A program made the translations under genes and the position numbers. Below are positions 9,327 to 60,235 of a stretch of 64,000 bases of DNA, in pieces. This DNA is from Convolutriloba macropyga. Taxonomy: Eukaryota. Under the pieces are notes generated by a model, which was given only the letters and a program-made list of their open reading frames with translations, had not been told where the DNA came from and made no database searches. How positions within the stretch are numbered: the stretch's first letter is position 1; every line of letters starts with the position of its first letter. The stretch is from positions 4,588,001 through 4,652,000 of the forward strand of contig NC_134472.1 of assembly GCF_964194025.1 (NCBI RefSeq). The letters are read 5' to 3'.

Positions 9327-11279
9327 ATGGCGAGTTTAGACGAAATTTCGCTCTCGTCGCACAATCAAATAGAGCGAACTAAAGAGTGTTTCGTTTGTAA
9401 GATTGAATTGAATATTGACGCTGGAGAAGTCCCATATTGCTGCCAAAATTGCTCGAAAAGTTCTGAAATCCCTGGACCCAAAATCTGGAATTGCATTGCG
9501 TGTATTGGTTCTTGTGCGCGGCAAAGGCACATAATTTTGGACGTAAATGGATACGAAGTTTCAGTTTGTGGGAACCACGGCACTATAAACGAGTATTTCT
9601 GTGAAAACGATGAGTGTTTGTGTGTTGTCTGCAGCCGTTGTTGCTTGCGTGAACACAAAAATCACGCCTTTGTTCCTTTAAGTGAGCGAAGTACAAAAAT
9701 TCGGACGCAGGTTTTTGAGTATATGAGTGAATTTGACTTGCTGTCGAAAGATCTGAAACATCATCAACAACTGGTTCTTGACTGTCGTGAATTCATGAAA
9801 GAAGCTGCGGAGTTCTGCAGTCCTGACAAATTTGGGAAAGTTCTTCTTGGGTATGCTGGCGATTTAGTTACAAAGATACTCGAGTGCGGCGATGCTGAGG
9901 GAAAACGGAAAGAGCTCATGACTAGTTTCAAAGCTGCTAACGAGATGATCATAAATGGAGGTGATGTAGGAGGAATTGAACAGCTTGCGAACAGTTCGGA
10001 AGCACTCAGTGTAAGTTTGCGTCAAGTTCTCTCGAAGTCAGATTCTGTAATGATAGAAAATTTTAACAAGATGATTTCCAGACTGAATGGGTCTTTAGAG
10101 CAGCAGAAACTGGCTTTGAGTTTTCACCTTTATGCTCGACCGCTCTATATTCGAGATGAAAACGTGAAAACTCAGCTTACCAAAGCTGTTCATGCTTTTC
10201 TTGCTTCACTGGTATGGCCAGCTCTAGGGACGTTAAATTACCATCAATTAACTGCTACTCAGCACAATTATACCGGTTTTCCAGAAGATTTTGTGTTAAA
10301 ACACACAATTGCGTTTCCAACCTACAATAATGTTTTTCTAGGCACTGACAATAATGGAAAATGGGTGGTTTTTATTCGTAATCGAGGCAGGTTTAACAGT
10401 TACTACAGAAGATGCAGTTTATGTGGAGACGGTAAATTGTGGCGCCACTATTTTTTCTGTAACGGTTGTTTACGTAACCCATCTGGTCAATATTACAGAA
10501 CAAAATTGAACGCGATACAAACTTTTTCAGCTTCTGTTATCAATGACGATATTTTGTCTGTTAGTACAATTTACGGCCATGTACATTATTTTAAAGAGAG
10601 TGGAGGTGTTTTTATTCTGGAGACGAAAAACGGATTCCATATCGCAAATCCGCTTCAGAACCCTAAGAGCAACGAAATTCCTCTAAAGCAAGTTTTCCCT
10701 GAGCTGGTTTCCAGAGATATTGTGGCGTTCTACTACACTGCATCCAATGAGCTAAACTGTTTAGTGTATGATGATAAGTCGCGTGTCATTAAACCTTTTC
10801 TTCTTGATCACAAAGTGAAGGCTTTCAATTGCTCTTCGAAGCCCCGACTTTTCTGTCTCAATTATAATGTTACTCTCTTTGCCATGATAAGTGGTCAAAA
10901 CAATGACATTCTAGTTGTATCATCCGAAGGTCCAGAAACGATTCCCTCCGTTGAGCATGGGTTTCGTTCAATAGACGATTTGCAATTCATGCTTGACAAA
11001 AATGTGGGCGCCCACGTGCTGGTTTTCTGGAATTTTGATCGGCAGATTTTTGGTGTAGCCAGGCAAAACAGATGTGATTCAAAATGGATTCTCGCTGCTG
11101 TGTTTACGGTTAAATTTCCCGCCGTAGATCTGGCTGTAAATCAAATTGCGTACGTCTATCAAGACCTGAAAAGCGAATCTTCGATTGCGTGGGATTCATT
11201 GTATGTAACTTTGAAAGGCGTTGTGAACCCATTCACCATTGAATTTCAATCTATATCTAACCTAGTACCGAAGTTGTAA
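9327..11279 (+). CDS. RING-less TRIM-like protein (B-box1, B-box2, coiled coil, unknown C-terminal domain), paralog 1, 650 aa, intact, single coding exon
   Basis: ATG in aaaATGG context (the ORF track start at 9216 is a GTG). B-box motifs CFVC..CQNC..CIAC and CGNH..CEND..CSRC..H..H. Family motifs VFEYMSEFDLLSKDLK, WPA, LNCLVYD, CSSKP, HGFRSID. Ends VPKL. Confidence 0.85.
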   Translation: MASLDEISLSSHNQIERTKECFVCKIELNIDAGEVPYCCQNCSKSSEIPGPKIWNCIACIGSCARQRHIILDVNGYEVSVCGNHGTINEYFCENDECLCVVCSRCCLREHKNHAFVPLSERSTKIRTQVFEYMSEFDLLSKDLKHHQQLVLDCREFMKEAAEFCSPDKFGKVLLGYAGDLVTKILECGDAEGKRKELMTSFKAANEMIINGGDVGGIEQLANSSEALSVSLRQVLSKSDSVMIENFNKMISRLNGSLEQQKLALSFHLYARPLYIRDENVKTQLTKAVHAFLASLVWPALGTLNYHQLTATQHNYTGFPEDFVLKHTIAFPTYNNVFLGTDNNGKWVVFIRNRGRFNSYYRRCSLCGDGKLWRHYFFCNGCLRNPSGQYYRTKLNAIQTFSASVINDDILSVSTIYGHVHYFKESGGVFILETKNGFHIANPLQNPKSNEIPLKQVFPELVSRDIVAFYYTASNELNCLVYDDKSRVIKPFLLDHKVKAFNCSSKPRLFCLNYNVTLFAMISGQNNDILVVSSEGPETIPSVEHGFRSIDDLQFMLDKNVGAHVLVFWNFDRQIFGVARQNRCDSKWILAAVFTVKFPAVDLAVNQIAYVYQDLKSESSIAWDSLYVTLKGVVNPFTIEFQSISNLVPKL

Positions 11280-11786
11280 ATTAAATGCAATAATTGCAAG
11301 TTCCGAGTCACCATATGGTCTATTTTCAAATTAGTTTTCTTGGTTCTATCCCCCCGCCCTATAAGAGGACTTATAACTTTTCCACCTACCAGGCGACCGT
11401 GCTTTTTTGTACATGGTAACGTGCTATATCACATTATATAAATTGTAGTTGGAGAAGGGGGCATAAAAACACTTGGGGTGGGTGGGGGACGGAATGATCA
11501 GTTTTCTTATAACGTCAAGAACTAATCAGTCTTCGAAAAATAGCTGAGAAAAGTTTCGTTACAAACAAATTGAAGATCTGCCTGGAAGAAAGATTTTTTA
11601 AATGAGGTTTTATAGAAAGCATAGTATTACGCAGCTCATTTTTGATAGATAGTCTCATAAACGTGTATCTTCATTATTTGGGGCCTTTTTAAATAGATGA
11701 GGCAAGAATCATTTTGCACCAAAATGCATTGAATTCGTTGAAGTCGCTTTGATTTTGATTTAACGAGTGCTTCGATTTTCAGATGA

Positions 11787-12760
11787 ATGTTGCATACTAA
11801 TGGGCGAAGTGGTGGAAAATGTTGCTCTGTTTGTGATCACGAATTCTCGATATAATCCGAAAACTATGAGGAACTGCCTTTGAATTGTGGAACTTGTGAA
11901 GACGCCGAAACACCTTCTGAGAGACAGTTTTTCTGCAACTGTTGCATTAGCTCCCATATGCGTAGGTTGCACCGTGCTCTGGACTGCAAAGGCTATGAGA
12001 TGTCAATTTGCCCTAAACACAAATCAATCAATGAATTGTTCTGTCGTAATTGCGACCGTGTTATCTGCCAACTCTGTGTGACGTCACACAAAGATCATAC
12101 AATCATTCCGATCCACGAGAAATGTGTCGAGACTCGCAAAGCAGTGTTCAAATACATCAACGATTTCGATTCTCTGACCAAGGACATCAAGTTTCAACAA
12201 CAGGTTCACCACGACTGCTTGGGAGACTTAGGCAAGGAGCATGCATTCTATAGGCCTGAAACTGTTCTGGATGGTTTAGTGAATGTTTTAAGTGAAAAGG
12301 TCAGAGAAGTTGCGAAAAGTGACGAAAATAAAGGAATTTTTAACATTCTATGCTTTAAATTTTGTGCGAATCGGGAGACGGTTCTAACAAAAACGAAATT
12401 GAATCAATTCGACCAGCTCGTATCTGAAGCTGACACAATGGGAAGAAAGTTACGCGAAATTTTGCAGAATTCTGACGGCGTACTTGTAAAAAAATCGAAG
12501 ATCTGACCGTCTCTATGTACGATAGCTTGAAGCGACAGAAAATTCATCTCAAAGAGGTTGCATGCTATTGCCCGTTCTATATTCGAGATAAAGAATTTCA
12601 GAATTTGGCTCAAAAATGTGTTTCCTCTTTTCTGGAATCCATGATATGGACAGCTGCAAATGCGCACACTTGTCGGGGTTCAGCTGACGTTGGTTTGCAG
12701 TGAACTTCATAACTGCAAGGTAATATTTTTCAAAGATGGTTCTTCCATTGTAGTTCAATC
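11787..12760 (+). pseudogene. TRIM-like paralog 2, pseudogene
   Basis: ATG at 11787 reads MLHTNGRSGGKCCSVCDHEFSI*SENYEELPLNCGTC, with an in-frame TAA at 11853-11855 at a position that is Glu in the 37679 paralog. A -1 frameshift falls in the A-run near 12490. Homology continues (PFYIRDKEF..MIWTAA) and then decays just before the copia LTR. Confidence 0.85.
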
Positions 12761-12872: not shown

Positions 12873-13119
12873 GTGGTATCATAATTATTCAATACATGCT
12901 GGTAAGATTTTACATCAGATGATAATCTCACTCTAATATAAGTTATCTAGATTCACCAATTTCAACCGAATATTGATTCTAAGCACCATTTCTTGACGAT
13001 TAATTTATATAAATTCTGTGATTATAATCAATTTGCTCTTGTCTTTGTAATCTGGTCAGTCAAACTTTCTTTCTAATTCTCACTAAGTTTAAGACTATAG
13101 TTTGATCGATATTCTAACA
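12873..13119 (-). repeat. copia 3' LTR, truncated (about 247 of 619 bp)
   Basis: Aligns to 17760-18000 at roughly 90% by eye. Similarity stops at 12873 and no TSD is recoverable. Confidence 0.85.
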
Positions 13120-13128
13120 CCCCCACTC
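13120..13128 (-). promoter_or_regulatory. polypurine tract
   Basis: Minus strand GAGTGGGGG immediately precedes TGTTAG (3' LTR start) and overlaps the pol stop codon. Confidence 0.8.
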
Positions 13129-16100
13129 AGACTTGAGCTGATTGCGTAGAGTCTGTTCCCATCAAAACTGCTCTGAATGTTTCCACTTTCGAAACGGGTA
13201 AGGTCTTTGTGAAGATGTCTGCTGCCATTTTGTCTGTAGGGACATAATGAATTGAAATAGTCCCATCCTCCGTCTTGTCCCGGATGAAGTGAAACTTTGT
13301 TTCGATGTGTTTGCTCCTTTTGGGCATCGATGGGTTTTGGCACAATTTTATGCAACTCTGGTTGTCCTCTCCAATTGCTATGGGATGTTTCTGTTGGATG
13401 CCGGAATCCCCCAGAAGTTGTTTCAGATACAATGCTTCTAGAACTGCTGCTGCCATGCCCTGATATTCTGCTTCTAATGAAGAAAGGGCAACTGTGGCCT
13501 GCTTCGTGACACCCCAGCTGAGTGCTGCGCCACGTCCGTTGAGCTTGAAGTAGTAGCCAGTCGTTGATTTTCTGTCGTTCACGTCGCCAGATCAGTCTGC
13601 ATCACTTTACCCCACTAAATTATAACGAGCGTCTTTTGTGTAAGTAAGTTGTTTATTGGTTCCAGTGTTTATTGGTAGGTGCATTCATGTGTCTGGACAT
13701 AATGTTGACTGTGAACATGATTTCTGGCCTCGTCTGTTTGGCCAGATACATAAGTGATCCAGCCAAGCTTCTGTAGATCCTCTGGTCCACTTTTTCGTCT
13801 CCGTTCTGTGCTGTCTGAAGTTACAAACTCAAATCAGCTGGAGCTCTTGAGGATTTGCATTGATCCATTTGAAACCGCTGAAGCATTGTTTCTACGTAGC
13901 GTTCTTGGTCGACTGTGACTTTGCCCTCTTCTCGTCTGATTCTTAGACCCCGAAACCAGTGTAATCTCCCTCTGTCTTCCATGTGAAATGTTGCCTCGAG
14001 TGCCTTTTTGACATCGGAAATCACTGTTATGCTTCTTGATGCTACTATGATGTCGTCAACCTAGACCAAGATGAAGGTATGACCCTCTGTCTCCGATCTC
14101 GTGATCAAGCAATGGTCAGTCCTGCTTCTGGTGAACACCTGTCTCAGAAGGAAGTTTGTCAGTTCCTTATACCAGTTGTTAGCTGCCTGTTTCAAACCAT
14201 AAATTGATTTTTTCAGTCGACATGATAACTTCTCTCCATCTGATCCTTGTTTTACAAATTCTTGTGGCTGTTCCAGATACACATGTTCCTCTATTGGTGA
14301 GTGCAGGAAGGCCGTCTTGACATCAAACTGATGCATCACACGGCCTTGCTTCGGTAATAATTGAAGCAGAGTCCTGAATGTCTCTGGCTTTCATGTAGGC
14401 GCAAAAGTTTCAAATTAGTCCAGTCCTGCCATTTGTTTGAAGCCTTTTGCTACATAGCGCGTTTTGTGCTTGTTGACTTGACAACTGGGACTCAACTTCA
14501 CATTGTAGACCCATTTGCCCGGTTTGACGTCCCTGTCTGTGGGTGGTCTCACTATGTTCCAACTCTCGTTGTCTTGGAGAGCCCTGACCTCGTCCTTCAT
14601 TGCCCAGTGCCACTGGCCCCAATCGTCACCTTGTTTGGCTTCGTAGACTGTTTTGGGTTCAACATAGTCACCCTCAGTCACAGCAAGATGGGCCCTGACT
14701 TGTCCAAAAAAGTGCGGAACATTCCTTGCTTGTGTCCATCGTCTGGGCTCTGCCCTGTCCGCTTGCTCCAGTGCCTCTTTAAAGAAGCCAACTGTCTCTG
14801 AGTGTGAGAAGTCCTCTATGTCACTGTCTTCCAGCGACTCCGAGTCTCGGAGATTCCCTCTTGCTGCAGTAGTTTCTCCATCTAGTGCTGCTTCCTCAAC
14901 ATCCGAAGCATCTCGTCTCAGTGTCGTTTCTTGAGTGTTCACGCTCTCTGCGTCATGTCACTCCTCCTTTAATGCAGTAGATGCGCCCTGCTCCTCTTTG
15001 TTGCCATAGTCTTGATGACCATCATCTGGGTGCCAAATCCCCAGTTGCTGTGACCCCTCTTCTAGTAGGTCGGGCGTCTCTGTGTTGACTGGAATTGAAA
15101 CCACTTCGGACTCCTTGTTGATCACATCTCGAACTGCCACAACCTCGCGTGTGTTGGGTACGTACACCAGGTATCCGTTGCTCCTTCAGTGTAACCCACA
15201 AACTTTCCTTCCAGTGCCTTGGGTTCAAGTTTGCTGACATCTCTGTCCCTCTTCCTCATGAAGACTGTGCAACCAAAAATAGATAATTTATTAGGTTTTA
15301 TACCTCGCATCAACTCTGCTGACTATTTTTCTTCTCGTCTCAACCAAGATCCGGATCCTTGTTGCGTGGAGAATTGATTCTACCCACATCATCTCGGGAA
15401 GACCCGAGTCAATGAGCAAGCATCTTGCCATCTCCAGCAGTGTCCTGTTGAACCTCTCAGCTTACCCATTCTGTTGTGGCATCTCTGATCTGGTCGTCTC
15501 CTGTACAATGTCTGCATATAAACAGTACATCTTGAACTGCTCTGAGAGAAACTCGTGCTCATTGTCTTGTCTCAGCTTCTTCGGCGTCCCCACACAGAAC
15601 AAACTTCTTCAGACTGGCCAGTGCTTTACTCTTTGCCTTAAGCGAATCCACAAACAAACTTCGTGTACTGGTCTGCAAACACTATGCAGAACCGGAACCC
15701 TGACAGTGACTGTACTCTGAAAGGCACCATCTCGTCTATGAGCGCCCTCTCCAGCTTCTCTTCTGCTTGGGTATGTGCCACTCTTGGTACTGGAGTCTGT
15801 GTGATCTTTGCCAATGCGCACACATTGCATTCATCATCGAGTTCCCCCACTATTTCTGGTGCATTCCTGACAACATCCGCTTGATTCAAATGACCCAATA
15901 GTCTGTGCCACTTCCTTTCACTGTCAGGTATCACTCTGTTGGAACTCATCTTGAATTCTAGAACGCTGCAGGGTAAGTAAAACAAATTATTTTCTTGTGT
16001 TAGTTTTACTCGAGCTCCCCTCTGGAGTTTCATGCAGCTATTTCCTTTCTCGAAAGTGAAGCTATGTCCCCACTCCGTGCATCTTGAGTCTGATAAGCAT

Positions 16101-16330
16101 CTAGAATAGTTAGGCACACAAAAAACATTTTTAAGTTCGCATTGGAATTCCCCTTTGTTTGAGGGTATGCTGATCCTCACACAGCCTCTGCCCACCTCTC
16201 TGGAAGCCTCTCCATTGGGATTTCTGACCACTGATTGAATGGGCACAAAGTCCAGGAACGCGTCGATGTTCGTCACTATGTGATCTGTACAACCACTGTC
16301 CACTAGCATGCCTGCTGTCTTCCACTGGGT
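13127..16330 (-). pseudogene. pol: copia pol (protease, integrase, RT, RNase H), disrupted
   Basis: Protease LVDSGCTDH; WHRLLGH..CNVC (integrase Zn region); FGCTVF..KLEPKA..GKFVGY; RT HQFDVKTAFLH, LKKSIYGLKQA and V*VDD near 14055; RNase H ATVALSSLEAEY, EDNQ, KHIETKFHFIR, ADIFTK. Confidence 0.92.
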
Positions 16331-16388
16331 AAGAGCTGCTCAGTATTCCTCGTCTGTTGAAGCCAATGTTAGACCCATTGCCACTGAC

Positions 16389-17328
16389 TCATGCATGTTT
16401 GCCTCCATCTCTTTGTTTCTTGCATGCCATGTCTAGATGACCTTTCTCACCACACTTGCTGCATTGTGCTGTCTCCTTCCTCCTGCAGTCCTCGGCAAAG
16501 TGTTTAGGGATCCCACATACAAAGCAGTTTCCTTTCTTGGGTTCCTTCTTGAAGTCACGCTTCACTGCCAGTGCCACTGAAGCACTTTGTCCCTTGTGTC
16601 TTTGTGTAGTGCTCTCATGAAAGTTCTGCAGCCTTTTCCTCAACTCTGTGAAGTTCGTTGCCGGGTTAAAACTTTCCTGTATAACAAAACTTACATATCT
16701 CATTGGCAGGCCATTGAGGACCAAGGCGTTGAAGAGGGTCTCTAAGACTGCTTCCCCTGCTTCTTGTAGATTTGTGAGCAACTCCTGTCCTCTGATGAAG
16801 AAGCTCTCCAAATCCTTAGCATCCTCTAGCTGCAGTCGAGCAAGCTGTGCCACCAAAAACACCACTGTCGGCGTCTACACATTCTGAAATCTCTTGCAAA
16901 AGCTTCCAAGCCTTTGTTCCATCTCCGATGACATCATCTCACTCACAGTCATGTCGCATCAGCATGAGGGTTGTTGCATCTAGATTCAGTGCCAGATGGC
17001 ACCACACATTGTTCCGTTTCTCCTTGATGTCTGCAACTTCCTTTTCATATGCATCCTTCAGCACCTTGTGGTTCTTCTCTTCATTGCTCCCTACATTGGC
17101 TTGTGGTGCAGGCTCATTGGGTTGCTTTTCTGTCCCAAGTAGTGATTTGTAAAGTCCTTTCGTCTGCATCATTGCCACAAATCTTGTGCTCCAGATTAGA
17201 AAGTCCTGTGCCTTTCCTGTGTAGGTCAGCAGCTTCACTGTCTGTTGATCAATCGTACTTTGAGCAGGCAAAACAGTAGTGAAAAGAAAAGGTACTAATA
17301 AGAAAAGGATTTTGACTGTCAAAAACAA
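16389..17328 (-). pseudogene. gag: copia gag with two CCHC zinc knuckles, disrupted
   Basis: YTGKAQDFLIWSTRF, VLNGLPMRY, CFVCGIPKHFAEDC and CSKCGEKGHLDMAC, split over 2-3 ORF pieces. Confidence 0.88.
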
Positions 17329-17365
17329 ATAATTTTTGTTTTAGAAATTATTTGACTTAGAAAAT

Positions 17366-17381
17366 TGCTGGGCCCATAACC
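17366..17381 (-). promoter_or_regulatory. primer binding site for the 5' half-molecule of initiator tRNA-Met
   Basis: Minus strand GGTTATGGGCCCAGCA directly follows the LTR end ...AACA. It is complementary to the anticodon-arm region of tRNAi-Met, as in Drosophila copia. Confidence 0.9.
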
Positions 17382-18000
17382 TGTTGGGTTATGGGTTCTC
17401 GCAAGCGGAAGAAAAAGCGTTTTCAACTAAATTGAAAAATTAATTTCTCAAAATGATAGAATAACAAGAATGATATTTTACAGTAGAATTTAGAGATTTA
17501 GAGGAGAGATCTGATTATTAGATCAAGATGGTGATTTGATTTTGGGGATGAAAAAAGTCTCAAAAATGAGCTGTATATATACCCATTATCAGTGCGCGAA
17601 ATTCAAGATACAAATCTAAACTTAGCATCATGATTTACAGTGGGGGTCGCAAGGGTTACCCAATATAGTTTGCTTCTGCAAATTTTCCAAAAATCAGTCG
17701 CAGGGGGTACCATAGATGGCTTGCACTAAAACTTTTCTAAGAATTCGTTCACATTTCCGGTGGTATCATATTCATTCAATACATGCTGGGAAGATTTTAC
17801 ATCAAATAATCTCACTCTAATAATAGTTATCTAGATTCACCAATTTGAACCGAATATTGATTCTAGGCACCATTTCTTGACGATTGATTTTCATAATTTC
17901 TGTGATCAAAATCAACTGTTCTTGTCTTTGTAATCTGGTAAGTTAAACTTCCTTTCTAATTCTCACTAAGTTCAAGACTAGTTTGATCGATATTCTAACA
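17382..18000 (-). repeat. copia 5' LTR, 619 bp
   Basis: TGTT...AACA termini, abuts the PBS, and its right part matches 12873-13119. Confidence 0.9.
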
Positions 18001-18526
18001 CTGGTCAAAGAAGTGACCATCAGTTAGAAACATTTATCGGACGTGTATGAACCAATCGAATTCCACATTATCATAGTTACTGAAAAATTCTAATAATGTA
18101 TTTTTTTCCAAACGCTCAGGAGCTCAATGGCATTGGAAACAAGGATTTAATTGTCAACGCGAAGATAATTTAATGTCACGTTTTTTCAGTTGAAGTTAAG
18201 GTTATTATGTTGGTGAAGAAGGAAAACCAATACTCGTCTGCTACTTACATTTTTTTGCTATATTTAATTATACTGTCGTCAGCATGATTTTTCACCTTTT
18301 CTGGTTGGATTACCGCGGTCAAATAGTATGAATTATGCTCATTTTTTTTACAAGATACGGTTTCTCTCCTTAATTTCTAAAAACCGGTCTATGTTTGAGC
18401 ATAATGTTTCTAATGTTAATAATTGTGTTTCGAAGTAAAGTGTCCGAGGGATTAAAATTTATTTTAAATTTTTATTGTAATTAAGTTTTTAGTGTTGCAT
18501 TTGTGTACCATACAGCTCTATTTTAT

Positions 18527-33158: not shown

Positions 33159-34865
33159 ATGGAACCACAAGAAGAAAACTGTTCAGCCAATGAGAATTCT
33201 TGTGCAGAATGTCAATTTGAGTTTGATGTCAGTTCTGAAGACTCAGAAGAGCTCAGTTACACCTGTTCAACTTGTAACGAGACCAAAGATGGAGCACTTA
33301 AGCTGCAATTTTGTAATTATTGTATTGTCTCACATGTTCGCAAGCAGCATCGTGTTTTGGACTCGAAAGGTTACGATATTTCAGTTTGTGATCAACATAA
33401 ATCAATTCACGAGTTGTTCTGTAGTTACTGCAATTTTGCCTTGTGTCGACAATGTATAACAGGACACAGGGGACATGAAATCATTCCAATTCGCGAGAAA
33501 TGCGCCGAGACGCGCAAGGAAGTTTTCAAATACATGAACGATTTCGATTTACTCACAAAGGATGTGAAATTCCAACAACATGTTCAGAAGGAGTGTTTGG
33601 AAAGTTTGGACGATGCTGTAGCATTTTGTAGACCGGAAACTGTTGTTGATGTATTGATTAGTCTAATTGCGGAAATGGTCAAAGATGTCGCGAGCGATGA
33701 AGATGTTAAAAGTTTGATTTCTGAACTGAGCGCCAAATTCGATCAAGATAGTAAGTTGACTCTCACTAAAGCGAAGTCAACTGAGTTTGATAGAGTGGTT
33801 ACAGAAGCGGACGATATTGGATTGAAGTTGAGAGAAGTGTTGCAGAATTCGGACGGAATGCTCGTTAACAAATTCAAAGCGATGGTAGACCAGATGGACA
33901 CCTCATTGAAACTACAGAAAGACCAGGTCGCAAATGTCAACTTCATGCAGCCATTTTATGTTAATAATCCTCAGTTTAGAAGCGATCTTAAGGTTGTTGT
34001 AAGAAAGTTTTTTAAGGATGTGGCATGGCCCACTGCTAAAACTGTGAAGCCGGTGATAGTGGGTTCGGAACGTGGACCCCCCATTACCGGTAATCAGAGA
34101 ATCGTATTATTTCCATTCGATGTCTATTGCCTGGTAGAGATGAACCATGAAGTCAACGAGAGGTTGGTTCGGATCATCAAGTGTGGTAATAAAACAGCGC
34201 TGATACCTCCTCGAAACTGTTTCGAATGCGGCAGACTTCTGGGTCAATTATCGACCATCATGTATGTATGTTGTCAAAGGTCTCTGGCCAAGGGCACAGA
34301 TCCCTACAATTTGGTTTCTTTTGTCAAGTTAAATAAAAAATCTCGTAAAATTGACTACAAACAGTCTCCTAAGACTCTTGAAAAGACAGTTGAAATAGTC
34401 TACCCCATAGGCATGGAACTCAAAAGGAGCTTGGGTGAATTCGTTGCCATATACGGAGATATTTTCCATATTGTCAATCCGTTCTGTGACGACACGGAAA
34501 CGCATATTCACCCTAAGCCACTATTTGACGGCGAGATAGTTCGAAACAACTTTTTTGTATACTACAGTTTGTGTATATCAGCATTAAATTGCCTTATTTA
34601 TGACAATGAATCGAAGAAATTGAGACCATATCTGACCGATAAAACGTTTCAGTCATATTCATGCCCCGAAAAACCGTCAGCTGTTACAGTGAGCAACGAT
34701 TTCAAGACTCTTTTCGCTGTGTTAGAATCAACTGGTGAAATTTTTGTGTTTTCCAGTGGTAGAGTCTGTAGATTTGTATTTCGAGTCCAAAAAGCTTTTG
34801 CTGCTCATCTGTTTGTTGAATTGTTAGAATTATGGCTACGTGGCAAAGTTGGCCTGACTGTTTAG
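33159..34865 (+). pseudogene. TRIM-like paralog 3, 3'-truncated (homology ends ~34760)
   Basis: Open from MEPQEENC with both B-boxes, EKCAETRKEVFKYMNDFD, WPTA, LNCLIYD and CPEKPSAVTVS. After EIFVFSSG the sequence is unrelated, lacking HGLR and the last ~115 aa of the 37679 paralog. Confidence 0.8.
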
Positions 34866-37678: not shown

Positions 37679-39595
37679 ATGGAAAAGGTCTGCTCGATCT
37701 GCGAAAGCGATTTTTCGATGGAATCGGATAATAGCGAGGAACTGCCCTTCAGTTGTGAAACATGTGAAGAGAAGAGAGCATCGGCTGAGAAGCAACTGTT
37801 TTGCAACTTATGCGTTGGTCAGCACGTGCGCAGATTGCACCGTGTTCTAGACTCGAAAGGATATGAAGTTTCAGTTTGTAAACAACACAAATCTATGGAC
37901 GAATTGTTCTGCACGGATTGCGATCATTCTTTTTGTCGGTTGTGCCTTATGCTGCACAAAGAGCATGATTTTGCGCCAATTCATGAAAAATGCGCAGAGA
38001 CACGTAAAGAAGTTTTTAAGTACATTAATCAATTTGACTCTCTTACGAAGGATGTTAATTTTCAGCAGCAGGTTCGAAAGGATTGTTTGGAAGCTTTAGA
38101 CAAAGCTAATGAGTTGTGTAATCCGGACACGGTTTTGGATGTACTGATCAAGATAATGAGTGATATGGTCCGAGAAACAGCAAAAAATGAGGATATTCAA
38201 ACGCTGCTGACAAGTTTGCAAGAACAGTTCCGCCAAGATTCCAACAAAACGACTCTAACAAAAGCAACGTCAGCTGAATTTGACCAGCTGGTGGCTAAAT
38301 CTGTTGAGCTGGGTGAGAACTTACGCCAAGTGTTGCAGAACTCAGATGCTGTCCTCGTTGACAAATTCCAAGGCTTGTTATCTGAAATGGAAAATTGCTT
38401 GAAGAAGCAGAGAGGGCAAGTTGGATGTGTCAGCTATATGCACCCGTTTTATATAAATAACGTGTCATTTCAAGGAAAACTGTCAAGCCTTATTAGTGTT
38501 TTCTTCACATCGATGGTGTGGCCCACCGCCTTTACTAAAGAGCCCCTTCAGATGCAGTTGAAACCTGGAGTATTGTTACGTGACAATTTCAAAATTGTTC
38601 TTCATCCCTTCGATGTATATACTTCTGTTGAGATGGACGACAGAGACCAAATCACTTTTGTGTCAACTGAAAAATGTGGCAACCGTACGCCTGCTCTTCC
38701 AACTAATTGTCTAAATTGTGGCTATCCTTTGTGGGGAATTTCAAGATGCAGTCAAGCTTCATATATGCGCTGTCCTGAGAACCCTCTTATAGATCCCTAT
38801 ACTTCAATTACGTCTTGTAACACTGTGCAACCTCGCCGTGAAGTTTCAGTCACCGACCAGAAGACGGTCGTTAGACTTTTGGAAATTGAGTTTCCATTGG
38901 AGGTGGAATTGACAGTAAGATTGGGTGATTTTGTTGCTATGTTTGAGGATGGACTTTACATATTCAACTCATTTGACAATTCTGAGAACAGCGCTTCTTT
39001 CAGGCTACTTTTTGATAAGCAGAACATTGAGCAATTTTTGCTCGTTTATTCTAGCTTGAATTTGGCGCGATTGAATTGCTTGATATATGACGAAAAGTTA
39101 AAAGAGATACGTTCAATTTTGGAGGATAAATCTTTTGAACGATATCAGTGTCCTGAGAAACCGTCGGCTGTGACTGTTAGCAGAGATTTCATGACACTAT
39201 TTGTGGCTCTGAAATCCACTGGCGAAATTCTAGTGTTATCTGGAGGAAAGACAGAAATTATTCCGCCTGTACATCATGGCTTGCGGACAATTGACGCTCT
39301 TCATTTTGTTATCAATGAATCGTACACTCCGTTTTTGCTTGCGTGGAATTACACGAAGAGGATCTGTGTCATTCTTCGTCAGTACACCTCTAAATACATT
39401 CCGATCGGCGTTGTCTCTCCAACGGTGCCTGATGACGGCTCTGCAGATTTGACACTTACAGAAGTCAAGGTCGTCAAACAACATCAAAAACTTGAGTTTC
39501 CAGATATGCTCTATTTGTTCTACACCGATGCTAAAAATAAGACTCCGAGCAGCTTCAAAATTACAGTTAAAGAGTTGCTGGCTTACTTTAAATAA
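37679..39595 (+). CDS. RING-less TRIM-like protein, paralog 4, 638 aa, intact
   Basis: CSIC..CETC..CNLCVGQHVRRLH (B-box1), CKQH..CTDC..CRLC..HKEH (B-box2), coiled coil, WPTA, LNCLIYD, CPEKP, HGLRTID. Confidence 0.9.
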   Translation: MEKVCSICESDFSMESDNSEELPFSCETCEEKRASAEKQLFCNLCVGQHVRRLHRVLDSKGYEVSVCKQHKSMDELFCTDCDHSFCRLCLMLHKEHDFAPIHEKCAETRKEVFKYINQFDSLTKDVNFQQQVRKDCLEALDKANELCNPDTVLDVLIKIMSDMVRETAKNEDIQTLLTSLQEQFRQDSNKTTLTKATSAEFDQLVAKSVELGENLRQVLQNSDAVLVDKFQGLLSEMENCLKKQRGQVGCVSYMHPFYINNVSFQGKLSSLISVFFTSMVWPTAFTKEPLQMQLKPGVLLRDNFKIVLHPFDVYTSVEMDDRDQITFVSTEKCGNRTPALPTNCLNCGYPLWGISRCSQASYMRCPENPLIDPYTSITSCNTVQPRREVSVTDQKTVVRLLEIEFPLEVELTVRLGDFVAMFEDGLYIFNSFDNSENSASFRLLFDKQNIEQFLLVYSSLNLARLNCLIYDEKLKEIRSILEDKSFERYQCPEKPSAVTVSRDFMTLFVALKSTGEILVLSGGKTEIIPPVHHGLRTIDALHFVINESYTPFLLAWNYTKRICVILRQYTSKYIPIGVVSPTVPDDGSADLTLTEVKVVKQHQKLEFPDMLYLFYTDAKNKTPSSFKITVKELLAYFK

Positions 39596-43698: not shown

Positions 43699-43769
43699 GA
43701 CCAGTACATGATTCGAACCAGCATCTCTTACTTGCTAGCTTACTGTGCTAACCATTGCACCAACTTGTC
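43699..43769 (-). mobile_element. tRNA-derived SINE head, duplicate copy
   Basis: Same as 41620-41690, with a perfect D-stem GTGC/GCAC in this copy. Confidence 0.65.
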
Positions 43770-45016
43770 TTGAGCTCTCCAACTTGGGCATATCTTATAA
43801 CCCGTTCTCTCGTTCTTTCTTCTTCTTCAAGGCTTCATTTATCAAGCGTGGTATACATCGAACAATTATAGCTTCTTGTCAAGCCTATCTTGTGCACAAT
43901 TTACGTACGCTTGTTCTCTCTCAACCTTTTAACATTTGTTTAGCATTTTACAAAATGTTCTTTTATGTTCGTTGTTGAGCTATTTGAGTTTTTTTTGCCA
44001 ATTTTTGTTTCAAATTTAATAATATATATTTTTTTCATTTTGTTCACTTAAACTATTTTCTAGCTTCGAACTTAAATTATAAGTTTGTAGTTTTTTTCTA
44101 TGTCAAGCAAAACCTTTTTTTATATCAGATTTTTCATAGAAAATTAAACGACCCAGTGAGGAGCTCTGAAATATTTTAAAACTTTTTGAAAAATACAGCG
44201 GTTTTGCTGCTTCATAATAGGTTTTAAAAATAATTGTGTTGTAGATGGGCTAGCAGAAAATTAGATTGTTTTGTTGATAAATCTTTCATAATTCGTGTTT
44301 TTGGAAGAAAAATGTTCATCGCTCAGCGTACAACCTCCTTCTGAGTCCTAGTAACAGATCGCTCTCTACAGAGCGCTTAAGGAGTAGGTATGTACAGGTT
44401 TTTTATGTTAATTTTTTGTCTGTGTTGTATTTTTGAACAAATTGATCAGACCAGCTCTTGAAAGGGTCTGCTATTCCTCAGGTAATGTTCAATAGTTTTT
44501 TTGGCCGCACGTGTTTGCAGTTTAACTTCATAAATGACTATCGCTCGAAACTTTTTGTATGGATATATAAATATAGAATGAATATGTAAATTTAGACAAG
44601 AAATTTCTTTATTCAGAGGGGAGTTACAGCAGAAATGAGAAAAGGTTTGTAATTTATACTGAATTGCTCATTTAAGAATTGAGCAAAACTTTAACGTTTA
44701 ATGACTTCGAATTCGTTATTTATGAAAATTTGAGCCAATACTGAAAGTCAGCTTCTCTTTTTATTGTTACTGTTACAGTTTCTAATGGTTCTAATCACAG
44801 GACTTTTTGACTGCGTTAAGGATTTATTTTATGCGAATAATTATTAAACTATTGTAATTAGTATCATGTAAACTCCTCTTGTTGATTGCTTTGCTGGCAT
44901 CCAGTTGGAAGTAGCTGTTTTGACTGGTGACTGGCTAACGAAATGGTGATACCTGGGTAACATTGTGTCTATCCGTGAAGAGCATTAAAAAAAGCTTTCA
45001 GAACTTAAGATGAAAT

Positions 45017-46453: not shown

Positions 46454-46489
46454 AGTCAAACATTGGGGATGGACCAATGCCGATACCAA

Positions 46490-49670: not shown

Positions 49671-50216
49671 ACCCAAAAAATCCATAACCCTTGCCTGCAT
49701 GCTACAGGAGTACCCAAAAATAGTTGGCTTTCTGTTGGAAAAGAATGACCCCTCTAAGACCAATTTTTGTCCATTTTTTTTTTTAAAAATTTTTGCGATT
49801 CTGGTGCAACTTGACAAATTCTGAACTTGTAAAAATTTGCAAAAAAATTCCTTGTAACTTCAATTTAGGCTCGTCTACAACCATAAGCAGTTAATAGTCG
49901 TCCATGGTTAAGCACTTGGTTAATGTTCCAATGAATGACCAGAAAAGTCATGAAAAAACTTCGAAAAAAAATTAATTTTTCATTTTTTGATTTCTCTTTG
50001 ACTATTGAGCAACCATTACACAAGTAAGTTCAACTACTAAGGGCAGAATTATGAAGACACATAGTCCCGTTGCCTGTCCCCTCCGAGTCTCTTTATAAAT
50101 AAATTATATTTAATTGATTTATATTTTGCAGAAATAAATTCTTTCTTTCTCTCTTTCCGTCCATTAATTTTTGTTGTTTTATCGTTTCAGTGATTAAATG
50201 TTGTTTAAGATAGACG

Positions 50217-52142
50217 ATGGATGGAACCGATTCTAAGGATTTATTGAGTGTTGCTGAGGGCAACCCTGAGGACACGCACAATGCATGCGACGAGTGCAAG
50301 GAGTTGCTTGAAGGAGAATCAAATCTTCTATATTGCTGTTTTCCTTGTAGCGAAGGTGAAGAGAAAACCTGCAACCGAAGTTTCATGTGCAGTAGTTGTA
50401 TCACACCACATGCTAAGAAAAATCACCTGATTATGGACATGTATGGTCATGAGGTTTCACTGTGTGAAAAACACAAATCTGTAAATGAGCTCTATTGTGT
50501 TACATGTGTAAACGTTATATGCATTCGTTGTGCGTTGGCTCATAAAAATCACGAAGTTTTGCCTATTGACCAAAAATCAAGTGATGTCAAAAAAGAGGTT
50601 TTTAAGTACATCAATGATTTCGATTCCTTGACAAAAGATGTGAAATATCATCAACATCGACAGAAAGTTTCTCTTGATGCGCTCAAATTAGAATCTGAAA
50701 TTTATCGACCAGATACAATTGATGGCACATTGCATCAATATGTCTCCGAAGTTTTCACAACAGCCTCAAAGAGTCACAAAATGTCCGATTTGAAGAAAAA
50801 GATGATCGAGAAATTTCGAAAAGATGGACGCGAACTACTAACGGAATCGAAGTCGACAAAATTTGATCGGATTGTAGACTCTGCGGACAATTTTGTGATT
50901 AAGTTGCGAGGTGTTTTGAATTCGTCAGATGATGTTTTAGTCTCGAGTTTCAACGAAATGATTTCTGCAATGGATAAATCCTTGAACGAGCAGAGAACTC
51001 ATTTGAATTTTCATGTGATTTTTCAGCCTTTTCATTTCCGAGATGAGAAGTTCCAGGAACTGTTGGTAGAAACGATAAGCTCCTTTTTCCAGTCAATGAT
51101 TTGGCCGACAGCCAAATTGTGTCCTATAAACAAAATCGAGATGACGAAAAGGATGCTGTCGCGAGAGTCTTTATCGAAGTCTTGCTTTCGCGTTTATGGA
51201 GCACCCGATATATGCTGTTTGTTCTTCCGCGATGGAAGCGGTGCTCTGAAATTGTCACTGAATCGTATTGGCATTCCAGGTGTTTCGTACTGCAGTTACT
51301 GCAACCCCTATCATTACATTAGAGAGAACTCAAGCAATGGGTTATTCTGCTGGAAATGTAAAATTTCATCTGACCGCAGAACTAGTTTCAAATTGAATCG
51401 ACACTTCGACGAAAATTTTCACGCGTCAGAGTTAACAGATATCAAGCTTGTCTCAAATCCATTCGATATATCATCTGCGAAAATTATGAAAAATTTTGTC
51501 ACCCTTATAGCCACGAAGACATCGTTTTTCAGTTGTAACATGTTGTCCAATGAATCTAGTGTCAACGTACAAAAAGTTTTTGATGGTCTTGATCAAACTG
51601 ATGTCTTGATATATTACCAGCAACGTGATAAAGTAAATTGTCTCATATACGATAATGATCAGAAACAAGTGCGGCCTTTTGAGCCGGATGAAAAACTAGA
51701 GGTCATTGCTTGTCGTGAAAAGCCGTTGCTGGTATCGTTCAACATTACCTTAAATTTCATGGCCGCAAAATTTAAAGATGACGATGCGAACAGTGTTCAT
51801 GTTTTATCTTCTGAAGGGAACTTCGAAATAACAGTGCACTGCCACGGCTTGCGGTCAGTTGATTCAATTTTGTTTTTATCCTCAACTTTGACTCTGTGGG
51901 ACTTCGAGAGATCTCTATGTGTCGTCTTACGTCAAAGTTGTAATGGTGAAATGTCAAAATGGATTTGTGTTGGTGTTGTTCATGCCACTTTTGAAGACGC
52001 TCCAACTGATACGAAGATACTCCGTGTTCAGTTTGTTACTGGTTCGACAGCCATCGTTGTGGTCGAGTTGCAAACCCCTGATAACCTCCTTGCTTATTGG
52101 ATTGACGAACTGGACTTTCTAAACAAAATTCCGAAACTGTGA
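50217..52142 (+). CDS. RING-less TRIM-like protein, paralog 5, 641 aa, intact
   Basis: CDEC..CFPC..CSSCITPHAKKNH, CEKH..CVTC..CIRC..HKNH, VFKYINDFDSLTKDVK, WPTA, VNCLIYD, CREKP, HGLRSVD. Ends IPKL. Confidence 0.9.
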   Translation: MDGTDSKDLLSVAEGNPEDTHNACDECKELLEGESNLLYCCFPCSEGEEKTCNRSFMCSSCITPHAKKNHLIMDMYGHEVSLCEKHKSVNELYCVTCVNVICIRCALAHKNHEVLPIDQKSSDVKKEVFKYINDFDSLTKDVKYHQHRQKVSLDALKLESEIYRPDTIDGTLHQYVSEVFTTASKSHKMSDLKKKMIEKFRKDGRELLTESKSTKFDRIVDSADNFVIKLRGVLNSSDDVLVSSFNEMISAMDKSLNEQRTHLNFHVIFQPFHFRDEKFQELLVETISSFFQSMIWPTAKLCPINKIEMTKRMLSRESLSKSCFRVYGAPDICCLFFRDGSGALKLSLNRIGIPGVSYCSYCNPYHYIRENSSNGLFCWKCKISSDRRTSFKLNRHFDENFHASELTDIKLVSNPFDISSAKIMKNFVTLIATKTSFFSCNMLSNESSVNVQKVFDGLDQTDVLIYYQQRDKVNCLIYDNDQKQVRPFEPDEKLEVIACREKPLLVSFNITLNFMAAKFKDDDANSVHVLSSEGNFEITVHCHGLRSVDSILFLSSTLTLWDFERSLCVVLRQSCNGEMSKWICVGVVHATFEDAPTDTKILRVQFVTGSTAIVVVELQTPDNLLAYWIDELDFLNKIPKL

Positions 52143-52840: not shown

Positions 52841-52859
52841 GATTATTCCCGTTTTTAGA

Positions 52860-58332: not shown

Positions 58333-60235
58333 ATGGAGATGTTTGACTCTGATTCATCGCTTTCTGAAACACGAGATATGGAGAAAGAAGGAAGAAACTG
58401 CAATGAATGTGGAAAAAGCTTGTCAAGTGAATTAGACATTCTTTTCTTCTGCTCTTCTTGTGCTGAAAGCGAAGAATCGGATCAAAGATCTTTTATTTGC
58501 AGTAATTGTATCTCTCCACATGCAAGCAAAAATCATTCAGTTATGGACGTGAACGGATATGAAGTTGCAATTTGTGAAAACCACAGATGTATAGTTGAGA
58601 TATATTGTGTTACTTGTTCTGTTGTTATTTGCTATCGTTGTACACTAAGTCATAGCAATCATGCATTTGTTCCAATTGGGCAGAAATCAGCCGAAGTTCG
58701 GAAAATGGTTTTCAAGTACATCAATGAATTTGATTTGTTGACGAAGGATGTAAAACACTATCAAAATCATCAGAAATTATCATTAAAAAGCTTATTTGAT
58801 GACTTGGAATATTACAGACTTGATACGGTGGATGATATTTTGTTTCAAATATTTTCAGAACAGTTTCGAACCATAACAAGCAGCATAAAATGGGATGACT
58901 ACAAACAGCAATTGTCTGAGCATGTCCAGACAGAACAGACCAGGGTGCTGAATGAAGCCAAGGCTTCTAAATTTGATGAAGTTGTTATTTCTGCCGATGA
59001 GTTTGTAAACAAGTTACGAGGTGTTCTTAGATTATCAGATGGTTTTTTGATCAAAATCTTTGAAGAGATGATTCCTTTACTGGATGGTTCCTTGGCAGAC
59101 CAGAAAACTCATCTAAAGTCACATGTAGTGTATCAACCATTCCATTTGCAGGGTCAAACATTTCACAAAGCGTTAATTACAGCCGCTCATACGTTTTTGG
59201 AATCAATTGTTTGGCCCACAGCTAAATTGTGCCCGGTTACTGAGGTTCACATGGAAAAAATTGGAGTAGCAGAAGACTTGGGCTCTAATTTCATCTTTCG
59301 CTCTTATATAGAGTCGGGTATACGTGTTTTGTTGAATATGAAGTTGACCCGATTTTCTGTTTCTAAAATAGTGCCTTTTCCAGCGTATTGTCGCGGATGC
59401 ATGACTAATAATGGGCTTTTTTCTCAGGACTGTGAGCATTGTTCTGACTCTGCCATCAAGGGTATTTGCTTCAGTTGAATAGGAAATTTGCAGCTTTGAA
59501 CTTGAAAGATTTCATATCAGTCAAACACGTGAAGGATCCCTTTAACGTTGCGTGGTCTGGTGAAATACCAATTGTTACTATTATGTTGAACATCGGTCAC
59601 TCGTGGTCAAGATGCAATATATTTTCGCATCACATTTATGCCGAAAGGTACGAAAATGGTAGTGGCCTTGATCCTGGTGATGCTTTGCTATATTATCACG
59701 AAAAGTATGATCAAGTTAATTGTTTAGTATTTGACTATGAAGCCCAAAAAATGGTCTCTCTAGAAACAGATAAGAATTTCAAATTCCATGCACTGAAAGA
59801 CCAGAACTATTTTCTTTCAGCTCTACTGTTCAATTCATGGCTGCTAAATTTGACAGAGATTGTCAAAATAGTATCCATGTGTTATCGGCAGAAGGTGGAT
59901 TTGAAATAACGGAAGAATGTCATGGTTTGAGGTCAGTTGATGCAGTGATGTTTCTGTCTTCAGCGCTGACTCTGTGGGATTTTAAGAGGTTCATGTGCGT
60001 TGTGGCGCGTGAGAGTTTTGTGGGTCCTGTGTCAAAGTGGATTTGCGTGGGTGCTATTCACGTGATATTTCACGGAGCAGACGATAAAAATGCAAAGATA
60101 TTGAGTGTTGAGTTTGTCCACAATCGCTTCGAAAATGTTCCTGGAAGTATTGTTATCGAAGTGGAAACTTTTAAAGGACAGCAAGGATTTTGGACTGCTC
60201 AAAATTCTTTTCTGGCATCAATTCCAAAATTGTGA
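58333..60235 (+). pseudogene. TRIM-like paralog 6, full length but with two -1 frameshifts (~59471, ~59782); recent pseudogene or assembly error
   Basis: Three ORF pieces (58318, 59466, 59837) tile the 50217 paralog. Restoring 1 nt at each site gives FQLNRKF and IPCTERPELFSFSSTVQFMAAKF. Ends IPKL. Confidence 0.85.

What the first reader, a model, noticed from the sequence alone, without database searches (positions are those of the whole stretch)
9327..60235. Expanded cluster of six intronless RING-less TRIM-like genes with an unrecognised C-terminal domain
Seen: six co-oriented single-coding-exon paralogs share two B-boxes, a coiled coil (VFKYINxFDxLTKDVK), a WPTA hinge and a ~300-aa beta-strand-rich C-terminal region (LNCLIYD, CxEKP, HGLRSID, WxF, KWI). 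This region does not read as PRY-SPRY, filamin, FN3 or canonical NHL repeats. Half the copies are damaged, each differently. Two subfamilies sort by position (11787/33159/37679 vs 50217/58333), with 9327 as an outlier. Known: lineage-specific TRIM expansions such as fish finTRIMs are often antiviral and evolve by birth and death. Inference: an undescribed invertebrate immune or anti-transposon sensor family, perhaps with a degenerate beta-propeller, which would need a partner for E3 activity.
Basis: partly seen in the sequence, partly recalled or inferred. Interest (0 to 1): 0.8.

Follow-up and report, generated by a model that had tools for sequence, protein, structure and literature searches.

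The report
Acoel RING-less TRIM-like propeller gene cluster
The window, from the acoel worm Convolutriloba macropyga, holds a tandem cluster of six genes (three intact, three broken) from a large undescribed family that joins the B-box and coiled-coil module of TRIM proteins, without the RING finger, to a very divergent beta-propeller; what the family does is still untested.

Summary
Six co-oriented paralogs lie at 9327-60235. Three are intact (650, 638 and 641 aa). Three are damaged, each in a different way. They group as c2/c3/c4, c5/c6 and the outlier c1.

The N-terminal half is a genuine TRIM-type B-box1 / B-box2 / coiled-coil module; a family profile hits TRIM28, TRIM5, TRIM2, TRIM25 and TRIM72 structures. 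I found no RING. No RING motif occurs in any frame of the window, in-frame stops precede the ATGs, and a RefSeq model of a paralog starts at the same Met.

The C-terminal ~340 aa match no Pfam family. They fold as a beta-propeller (AlphaFold pLDDT 78, pTM 0.79). All top 50 Foldseek hits are propellers, and the sequence-profile hits at E <= 0.02 are all WD40 propellers.

The source is Convolutriloba macropyga. The family has about 300 representatives at 50% identity. All 30 clusters I sampled come from unannotated holobiont or metagenome assemblies, plus one RefSeq "uncharacterized protein". At least one other acoel carries the family.

Two copies with diverged duplicates show purifying selection (omega about 0.4 overall, 0.1-0.3 in the B-boxes and coiled coil). 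A segment from the linker into the first propeller blades evolves near neutrally.

Verdict: a new variant of a known kind, a Brat-like RING-less TRIM with a non-NHL propeller.

The parts
9327..11279 (+). c1: intact paralog, 650 aa. It is the outlier subfamily. A 96%-identical protein (P0002) exists elsewhere in the database.
11787..12700 (+). c2: pseudogene holding only the B-box and coiled-coil half. It has an in-frame stop at 11853-11855 and a frameshift near 12491-12506, and similarity ends about 12660-12700. No propeller remnant lies downstream.
12873..18001 (-). Degenerate Ty1/copia LTR retrotransposon lying directly after c2. Its LTRs (12873-13120 and 17760-18001) are 89.5% identical.
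33159..34865 (+). c3: an open 568-aa frame that is C-terminally defective. Family similarity ends near 34763, the last ~33 codons are unrelated, and the HGL..D blade and the following blades are lost.
37679..39595 (+). c4: intact paralog, 638 aa. Omega is 0.41 against its 86%-identical counterpart on another contig of the same sample.
50217..52142 (+). c5: intact paralog, 641 aa. This copy was modelled by AlphaFold2.
50286..50438 (+). c5 B-box1-like zinc module. Ligands are C24, C27, C41, C44, C58, C61, H65 and H70 (D74 is also conserved). The loop between the 4th and 5th ligands is expanded. The module aligns to TRIM28 B-box1.
50463..50552 (+). c5 B-box2, with ligands C83, H86, C94, C97, C102, C105, H109 and H112. 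This is the only Pfam hit in the protein (zf-B_box, 26.8 bits against a cutoff of 24.1).
50565..51095 (+). c5 coiled-coil region: helices 117-162, 165-184, 187-204, 210-224, 249-262 and 277-293. Up to about profile position 250 it aligns to the coiled coils of TRIM28, TRIM5, TRIM25 and TRIM72. It is followed by the WPTA motif (51102-51113).
51114..52139 (+). c5 C-terminal beta-propeller with about 24 strands, which suggests six blades and possibly seven. Family-wide conserved residues are P503, H543-G-L and D549. The HGL..D...W(D/N) stretch resembles a WD repeat.
51291..51359 (+). c5 CxxC-x(n)-CxxC insert, possibly a zinc ribbon, in the poorly modelled first part of the propeller. Only 7 of 53 family members have it.
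58333..60235 (+). c6: pseudogene in three frames (58333-59478, about 59472-59819, 59783-60235). It belongs to the c5 subfamily.

Best explanation
These are members of a lineage-restricted gene family of acoel worms. The family has about 300 representatives at 50% identity. It encodes RING-less TRIM-like proteins with the order B-box1, B-box2, coiled coil, then a highly divergent WD40-like beta-propeller.

Shown here:
- the domain order;
- conservation of all 16 zinc ligands;
- the TRIM-type coiled coil;
- the propeller fold;
- the absence of a RING;
- the tandem arrangement with old duplications and independent inactivations;
- purifying selection on the intact copies.

Inferred by analogy with solved TRIMs:
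- The coiled coil makes an antiparallel dimer.
- The B-boxes drive higher-order assembly.
- The dimer presents two propellers as the target-binding surfaces.
- With no RING, the proteins act as recognition or scaffolding adaptors. They would sequester or mark a target, or recruit an E3 in trans.

The large, fast-diverging repertoire that turns over by birth and death fits recognition of variable targets best. Candidates are parasites, viruses, transposons and symbionts. That last step is the least supported.
For: - Six paralogs were mapped, with their lesions.
- B-box2 is found by Pfam and by PDB sequence search.
- A family profile of the N-terminal half hits only TRIM structures: TRIM28 at E 5e-7 over B-box1, B-box2 and coiled coil, then TRIM5, TRIM2, TRIM25, TRIM72 and TRIM3.
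- The zinc ligands are invariant or nearly so across 33-44 members.
- The C-terminal model has pLDDT 78.3 and pTM 0.79.
- Foldseek's top 50 hits are all beta-propellers, E 6e-7 to 2e-4. The full-length model gives the same result.
- The C-terminal profile hits at E <= 0.02 are all WD40 propellers: Prp19 at 2e-4, then Tex1 and Swd3.
- Sub-threshold Pfam hits to recognisable folds are propeller families.
- No RING motif occurs in six frames. In-frame stops lie between the upstream acceptors and the ATG.
- RefSeq XP_075246077.1 starts at the same Met as the plain ORF.
- Family size is 302 at E <= 1e-3 and 192 at E <= 1e-10.
- Omega is 0.41-0.42 overall and 0.09-0.3 in the B-boxes and coiled coil.
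- In the c4 pair, the linker and first blades have a higher N/S ratio than the rest (Fisher p = 7e-4). The c5 pair shows the same trend without a test.
- Another contig of the same sample holds a colinear second copy of c4-c5-c6. There c5 is the broken copy.
Against: - There are no expression, binding or ubiquitination data.
- Propeller similarity is generic: TM 0.35-0.50 and about 10% identity, so no ligand class can be inferred.
- Residues 300-415 are poorly modelled.
- The fast segment is compatible with plain relaxed constraint (omega not above 1; p = 0.48).
- The paralogs are old (26-52% amino-acid identity), so turnover is not rapid in the way it is for finTRIMs or TRIM5.
- The dimer and adaptor mechanism is transferred from vertebrate TRIM structures. 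It was not tested on these proteins.
- The Vibrio-challenge study in C. macropyga lists 29 differentially expressed genes and does not name TRIM or B-box proteins.
Confidence: 0.55

Rival explanations
1. Brat / TRIM-NHL-like post-transcriptional regulators. The propeller's top face would bind RNA motifs, and the proteins would repress translation in the germline, in stem cells (neoblast-like cells) or in development, with no role in defence.
For: The architecture matches Drosophila Brat: two B-boxes, a coiled coil and a C-terminal propeller, with no RING. Brat is listed as 'TRIM-like' in subfamily C by Marin 2012 (PMC3503706). About 24 strands suggest six blades, as in NHL domains. The core is under purifying selection.
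Against: - No NHL or filamin signal appears in 53 members, even at E 0.1.
- No TRIM-NHL or Brat structure appears among the profile hits or in the Foldseek top 50.
- Hundreds of divergent paralogs with frequent pseudogenes are unusual for conserved developmental regulators.
- No 1:1 orthologs outside acoels were seen among the best hits.
Confidence: 0.2
2. Substrate receptors for a cullin-type or other multi-subunit ubiquitin ligase. A WD40-like propeller would dock on DDB1 or a similar adaptor, as in DCAF, COP1 or TRAF7 logic, and the B-boxes and coiled coil would only oligomerise the protein.
For: The sequence-profile hits at E <= 0.02 are all WD40 propellers. They include Prp19, a coiled-coil plus WD40 ligase. 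The COP1-DDB1-DET1 complex appears among the Foldseek hits of the full-length model.
Against: Similarity is generic. I did not look for a DDB1-binding helix or WDxR motif, so none was shown. The WD40 Pfam models do not reach threshold.
Confidence: 0.1
3. Ordinary RING-bearing TRIM genes whose RING exon lies upstream and was missed because only ORFs were read.
For: Good 3' splice acceptors lie 10-30 nt upstream of the ATG of c2, c4, c5 and c6, so an upstream exon probably exists.
Against: - An in-frame stop lies between that acceptor and the ATG in c2, c5 and c6.
- No C3HC4 or C3H2C3 pattern occurs in any of the six frames of the 64 kb window.
- The RefSeq model of a paralog begins at the same Met.
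- SL trans-splicing is known in an acoel (PMC9911081). It gives an alternative use for those acceptors.
Confidence: 0.05
4. A decaying, functionless family: dead ORFs, or cargo of a mobile element.
For: Three of the six copies are broken. An LTR element abuts c2. The genes lack coding introns and are multi-copy.
Against: - The 638-650 codon frames are intact.
- Omega is 0.09-0.3 over the B-boxes and coiled coil and about 0.3 over the propeller core.
- The zinc ligands are invariant across the family.
- No shared flanking repeats or terminal repeats surround the copies.
Confidence: 0.04

Closest known systems
Drosophila Brat and other RING-less members of TRIM subfamily C / class VII (TRIM-NHL)
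   Same: The domain order is the same: B-box1, B-box2, coiled coil, C-terminal beta-propeller, with no RING. The strand count also suggests a six-bladed propeller.
   Different: The propeller shows no NHL-repeat signal by sequence and has no filamin domain. The family is acoel-restricted and hugely expanded, not a conserved single-copy regulator. One subfamily carries a Cys4 insert inside the propeller.
Lineage-specific TRIM expansions (fish finTRIM/btr, primate TRIM5/22 cluster)
   Same: Tandem clusters, many paralogs, pseudogenes, and a more variable target-binding C-terminal half.
   Different: Those proteins keep the RING and use a B30.2/PRY-SPRY domain, and their positive selection is documented. 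Here there is no RING, the C-terminal domain is a propeller, the paralogs are old (26-52% identity), and no omega above 1 was demonstrated.
RING-less vertebrate TRIMs (TRIM16, TRIM29, TRIM44 type)
   Same: They have B-boxes and a coiled coil without a RING. TRIM16 is reported to heterodimerise with other TRIMs and to have B-box-dependent E3 activity (PMC3357404, abstract seen).
   Different: Their C-terminal domains differ (SPRY or none). They are single-copy genes.
Coiled-coil plus WD40 ubiquitin ligases (Prp19, COP1, TRAF7)
   Same: An oligomerising coiled coil is followed by a WD40-type propeller that binds substrates. The Prp19 WD40 domain is the best sequence-profile hit (E 2e-4).
   Different: Those proteins carry a U-box or RING and no B-boxes. 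Similarity is marginal and generic to WD40 propellers.

Membership tests
TRIM / RBCC family (canonical) | N-terminal RING finger | tested here: not met
   No RING Cys/His pattern occurs in any frame of the window. In-frame stops lie upstream of the ATGs. Pfam finds no RING in 13 members. A RefSeq paralog model starts at the same Met. Transcript data are still needed for certainty.
TRIM / RBCC family (canonical) | B-box2 zinc finger (C-x2-H-x7-C-x2-C-x4-C-x2-C-x3-H-x2-H) | tested here: met
   Pfam zf-B_box scores 26.8 bits for c5 against a cutoff of 24.1; c1 and c4 fall just below the cutoff. PDB hits go to the B-box2 of TRIM29, TRIM39, TRIM41, PML and MID1. All eight ligands are invariant or nearly invariant.
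TRIM / RBCC family (canonical) | B-box1 preceding B-box2 | tested here: met
   Eight conserved ligands lie at c5 residues 24-70. The spacing is B-box1-like except for a longer 4th-5th loop. The profile aligns this region to TRIM28 B-box1. No Pfam model reaches significance on it, so the assignment rests on the profile alignment and the ligand pattern.
TRIM / RBCC family (canonical) | Coiled coil directly after B-box2 | tested here: met
   The profile alignment runs through the coiled coils of TRIM28, TRIM5, TRIM25 and TRIM72. AlphaFold predicts long helices over residues 117-293. Dimerisation itself was not tested.
TRIM-NHL (class VII) / Brat | C-terminal NHL repeats (six-bladed NHL propeller), often after a filamin domain | tested here: not met
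   No NHL or filamin Pfam hit appears in 53 C-terminal regions at E <= 0.1. No TRIM-NHL chain appears in the PDB profile search at E <= 10 or in the Foldseek top 50. The fold class (propeller) is shared. Blade number could not be checked because no coordinates were available.
TRIM class IV / finTRIM | C-terminal PRY-SPRY (B30.2) domain | tested here: not met
   No SPRY or PRY hit appears. The model is a propeller.
WD40-repeat beta-propellers | Recognisable WD repeats (Pfam/SMART WD40 at threshold) | tested here: not met
   No WD40 hit reaches the gathering threshold. There are only sub-threshold hits to propeller families such as THOC3, WDR19, EML and ANAPC4_WD40 (E 0.02-0.1). One blade keeps an H-G-L...D...W-(D/N) pattern.
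WD40-repeat beta-propellers | Remote sequence homology and beta-propeller fold | tested here: inconclusive
   Profile against PDB: the hits at E <= 0.02 are all WD40 propellers, but they are weak (best E 2e-4). Foldseek finds propellers of several superfamilies (WD40, BBS1, Vps11, Drp35, PON1) at TM 0.35-0.50. The fold is met; the superfamily is unresolved.

The most novel reading that the evidence does not exclude
Acoels have lost the canonical animal immune signalling pathways (PMC12849515). They may have built a replacement recognition layer from hundreds of RING-less B-box / coiled-coil / propeller proteins. Each such protein would form a dimeric, lattice-forming sensor, and its variable first propeller blades would bind a different viral, transposon-derived, bacterial or algal-symbiont ligand.
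Probability: 0.2. Interest if true: 0.75.

Novelty: new variant of a known kind. Interest (0 to 1): 0.5.

Why it matters
TRIM classification has no class that joins the B-box and coiled-coil module to a WD40-like, non-NHL propeller. This family adds one.

The family is large and confined, as far as I sampled, to acoels. [quoted passage not shown] The family is therefore a concrete set of candidate genes for that question.

The public C. macropyga genome and RNA-seq data could test it. If the proteins turn out to be Brat-like RNA regulators or ligase adaptors instead, the interest is mainly evolutionary: domain shuffling onto the TRIM scaffold.

Tried and rejected
- Word-indexed protein search with c5 and with a 44-sequence family alignment returned only the window's own protein. 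The family became visible only in the exhaustive HMM search.
- Pfam on the whole proteins and on 53 C-terminal regions gave nothing beyond B-box2.
- Single-sequence PDB search gave only B-box hits.
- I looked for the missing propeller half of c2 beyond the LTR element, using relaxed tblastn. None was found, so c2 is truncated and not merely split by the insertion.
- I looked for shared flanking repeats that would mark the genes as transposon cargo. None was found.
- Positive selection in the fast segment was tested. Its N/S ratio is significantly higher than in the rest of the gene (p = 7e-4) but is not above the neutral expectation (p = 0.48). I therefore do not claim diversifying selection.
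- dN/dS among the window's own paralogs was not attempted. At 26-52% amino-acid identity, synonymous sites are saturated.
- The 501-aa ORF at 27300-28805 (-) matched no Pfam family or PDB chain significantly.
- Blade number could not be verified, because the tools do not expose model coordinates.
- An early working note took P0002 to be the c4 counterpart. It is in fact a 96%-identical relative of c1. The c4 counterpart is the 650-aa gene at L002:3020-4972.
Full report
**What is in the sequence**

The window is AT-rich eukaryotic DNA with no N runs. tblastn with the three long ORFs finds six homologous loci, all on the + strand.

- c1, 9327-11279: intact, 650 aa.
- c2, 11787 to about 12700: stop at codon 23, a frameshift near 12491-12506, then similarity ends.
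- c3, 33159-34865: an open 568-aa frame. Similarity ends near 34763, and the conserved HGL..D blade and everything after it are missing.
- c4, 37679-39595: intact, 638 aa.
- c5, 50217-52142: intact, 641 aa.
- c6, 58333-60235: split over three frames.

E-values between copies run from 1e-33 to 1e-151. The grouping is supported by identities and by a maximum-likelihood tree with SH-aLRT 98-100: c2/c3/c4, then c5/c6, with c1 apart.

**Source organism**

The c3 protein is on record from ENA sample ERZ25071359, on a 106-kb contig at 59x coverage. A family member on another contig of that sample (P0152) is 100% identical over 603 residues to RefSeq XP_075246077.1, 'uncharacterized protein LOC142339730' of Convolutriloba macropyga. 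C. macropyga is an acoel of the phylum Xenacoelomorpha. The window is therefore host DNA from a C. macropyga holobiont assembly. The published genome is 1.18 Gb with 3.65% heterozygosity (PMC13650328).

**N-terminal half**

- Pfam sees only B-box2.
- Across 33-44 family members the eight B-box2 ligands (c5 C83, H86, C94, C97, C102, C105, H109, H112) are invariant or nearly so. So are eight further ligands upstream (C24, C27, C41, C44, C58, C61, H65, H70).
- A profile of this half hits only TRIM structures in the PDB. The best is TRIM28/KAP1 at E 5e-7, with the alignment running from B-box1 through B-box2 into the coiled coil. TRIM5, TRIM2, TRIM25, TRIM72 and TRIM3 follow.
- AlphaFold predicts long helices over residues 117-293.

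This is a genuine TRIM-type B-box1 / B-box2 / coiled-coil module.

**RING**

- No RING-type Cys/His pattern occurs in any of the six frames of the 64 kb.
- Good 3' splice acceptors lie 10-30 nt upstream of the ATG of c2, c4, c5 and c6. In c2, c5 and c6 an in-frame stop lies between the acceptor and the ATG. Whatever is spliced there is therefore non-coding for this frame.
- SL trans-splicing affects 30% of genes in the acoel Symsagittifera roscoffensis (PMC9911081). These sites could be SL acceptors or the ends of 5'-UTR introns.
- The RefSeq paralog model starts at the same Met as the plain ORF.

RING-less is well supported. Transcript evidence is still needed to make it proven.

**C-terminal half**

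- No Pfam family matches it in the window copies or in 50 relatives.
- Iterated searching within the retrieved family shows a shared core of about 190 aa, at c5 residues about 400-600.
- A 53-sequence profile hits WD40 propellers in the PDB and, at E <= 0.02, nothing else. The hits are weak: Prp19 at 2e-4, Tex1/THOC3 at 5e-4, Swd3 at 6e-3. Weaker rows include UTP4, Atg18, LIS1 and one unrelated archaeal protein, PH1500.
- AlphaFold2 with that alignment gives pLDDT 78.3 and pTM 0.79, an all-beta model with about 24 strands.
- Foldseek against the PDB returns only beta-propellers in the top 50: BBS1, Vps11, G-beta, Groucho, Prp19, Lis1 and PON1, at E 6e-7 to 2e-4 and TM 0.35-0.47.
- The full-length model gives the same picture and adds the six-bladed Drp35 at TM 0.50.
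- Family-wide conserved residues are P503, H543-G-L and D549. With a following W-(D/N) they look like one surviving WD-type repeat.
- Residues 300-415 are poorly modelled. In 7 of 53 members, including the window's intact copies, this stretch holds a CxxC...CxxC insert.

The blade number, six or possibly seven, is inferred from strand counts only.

**Family and distribution**

An exhaustive profile search of 1.84 billion representatives finds 302 proteins at E <= 1e-3, 192 at E <= 1e-10 and 42 at E <= 1e-30. Most are single ORFs of 520-670 aa. Of the 30 clusters I looked up, 28 come only from ENA assemblies and one from JGI/IMG, all unnamed. The remaining cluster also holds the RefSeq 'uncharacterized protein'.

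Members were traced to four samples. In one of them, ERZ25074608, a neighbouring PSMD2 fragment is 81% identical to the C. macropyga one and at most 57% identical to any other animal's. That host is therefore another acoel.

The window's six copies sit in one clade with SH-aLRT 100, together with other proteins from C. macropyga or of untraced origin. C. macropyga also has members in distant clades. I found no paper that describes the family.

**Evolution**

The window's paralogs are old, at 26-52% amino-acid identity. A second contig of the same sample carries a colinear copy of the c4-c5-c6 segment at 75-92% nucleotide identity. There the c4 counterpart is intact, the c5 counterpart is broken and the c6 counterpart is cut short. 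Inactivation has therefore struck different copies in the two segments.

| Comparison | dN | dS | omega |
|---|---|---|---|
| c4 vs its counterpart, whole gene | 0.069 | 0.168 | 0.41 |
| c4 pair, B-boxes and coiled coil (sliding windows) | | | 0.09-0.3 |
| c4 pair, propeller core | | | about 0.3 |
| c4 pair, residues about 240-400 | | | 1.1-1.4 |
| c5 vs its broken counterpart, residues 193-641 | 0.053 | 0.126 | 0.42 |
| c5 pair, residues 301-400 | | | 0.72 |
| c5 pair, coiled coil (residues 193-300) | | | 0.18 |

In the c4 pair, the segment spanning the linker and first blades has a higher N/S ratio than the rest of the gene (Fisher p = 7e-4). It does not exceed neutrality (p = 0.48). The intact genes are under selection, and the segment before the propeller core is free or fast. 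Positive selection is not shown.

**Mechanism**

The parts list is shown. The way it works is inferred from solved TRIMs:
- the coiled coil forms an antiparallel dimer;
- the B-boxes drive higher-order assembly;
- the C-terminal domain binds the target.

Without a RING, these proteins would act as recognition or scaffolding adaptors, or would borrow ligase activity in trans. Heterodimerisation and B-box-dependent activity are reported for RING-less TRIM16 (PMC3357404).

The nature of the target is open. The size and divergence of the family, its turnover by birth and death, and its restriction to acoels favour variable, non-self or selfish targets. The Brat-like architecture favours RNA. Acoels are reported to lack the major immune signalling pathways, and half of the Vibrio-responsive genes in C. 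macropyga are uncharacterised or acoel-specific (PMC12849515). That paper does not name this family, so the link is only a lead.

**Verdict**

This is a real family, undescribed as far as my literature searches show. I file it as a new variant of a known kind: a RING-less TRIM-like scaffold with a divergent WD40-like propeller in place of NHL or SPRY. The functional claim remains a hypothesis.

Noticed in passing
window 12873-18001 (- strand): A degenerate Ty1/copia LTR retrotransposon. Pfam finds RVT_2, a gag-pre-integrase domain, a Pol beta-barrel, Retrotran_gag_2 and a zinc knuckle, spread over many broken frames. The LTRs at 12873-13120 and 17760-18001 are 89.5% identical, so the insertion is old. 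It lies immediately after the truncated c2.
   Followed up: partly
window 27300-28805 (- strand): An intact 501-aa ORF in a slightly GC-richer block (about 26-31 kb). It has a hydrophobic N-terminus, a Gly/Ala-rich hydrophobic stretch, heptad-like helices and a Cys-containing tail. It looks like a viral or retroelement fusion glycoprotein, but it has no significant Pfam or PDB match.
   Followed up: partly
window 23201-25794, and 32348-32510: A 395-bp satellite with 6.6 copies at 95% identity, each unit carrying a short ORF. A related 165-nt fragment lies 6.5 kb downstream, just before c3.
   Followed up: no
window 40548-44731: A 2.1-kb tandem duplication (40548-42646 and 42629-44731) at 97.6% identity, between c4 and c5. 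The paralogous segment on contig ctg37207 has only one copy, at L002 6039-8166.
   Followed up: no
window 45016-46478: A nested tandem array with periods of 105, 199 and 462 nt at 89-94% identity, between c4 and c5.
   Followed up: no
window 11770-11786, 37655-37678, 50175-50216, 58295-58332: A polypyrimidine tract and AG acceptor lie 10-30 nt upstream of the ATG of c2, c4, c5 and c6. In three of them an in-frame stop follows before the ATG. These could be 5'-UTR intron acceptors or spliced-leader trans-splice sites; SL trans-splicing is known in the acoel S. roscoffensis.
   Followed up: partly
L002 (ena:ERZ25071359:ctg37207_56x_l, 50909-71628), against window 36808-58832: A second colinear copy of the c4-c5-c6 segment in the same sample, at 75-92% nucleotide identity (genic dS 0.13-0.17) and similar read depth (56x against 59x). 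It is either a segmental duplication or an unusually divergent haplotype. The same 312-kb contig holds at least three more family genes (654, 660 and 669 aa).
   Followed up: partly
L007 (ena:ERZ25074608:ctg185728_105x_l): A family member lies next to PSMD2/RPN1 exons. Their product is 81% identical to the C. macropyga protein and at most 57% identical to that of any other animal. This identifies the unnamed sample's host as another acoel.
   Followed up: yes
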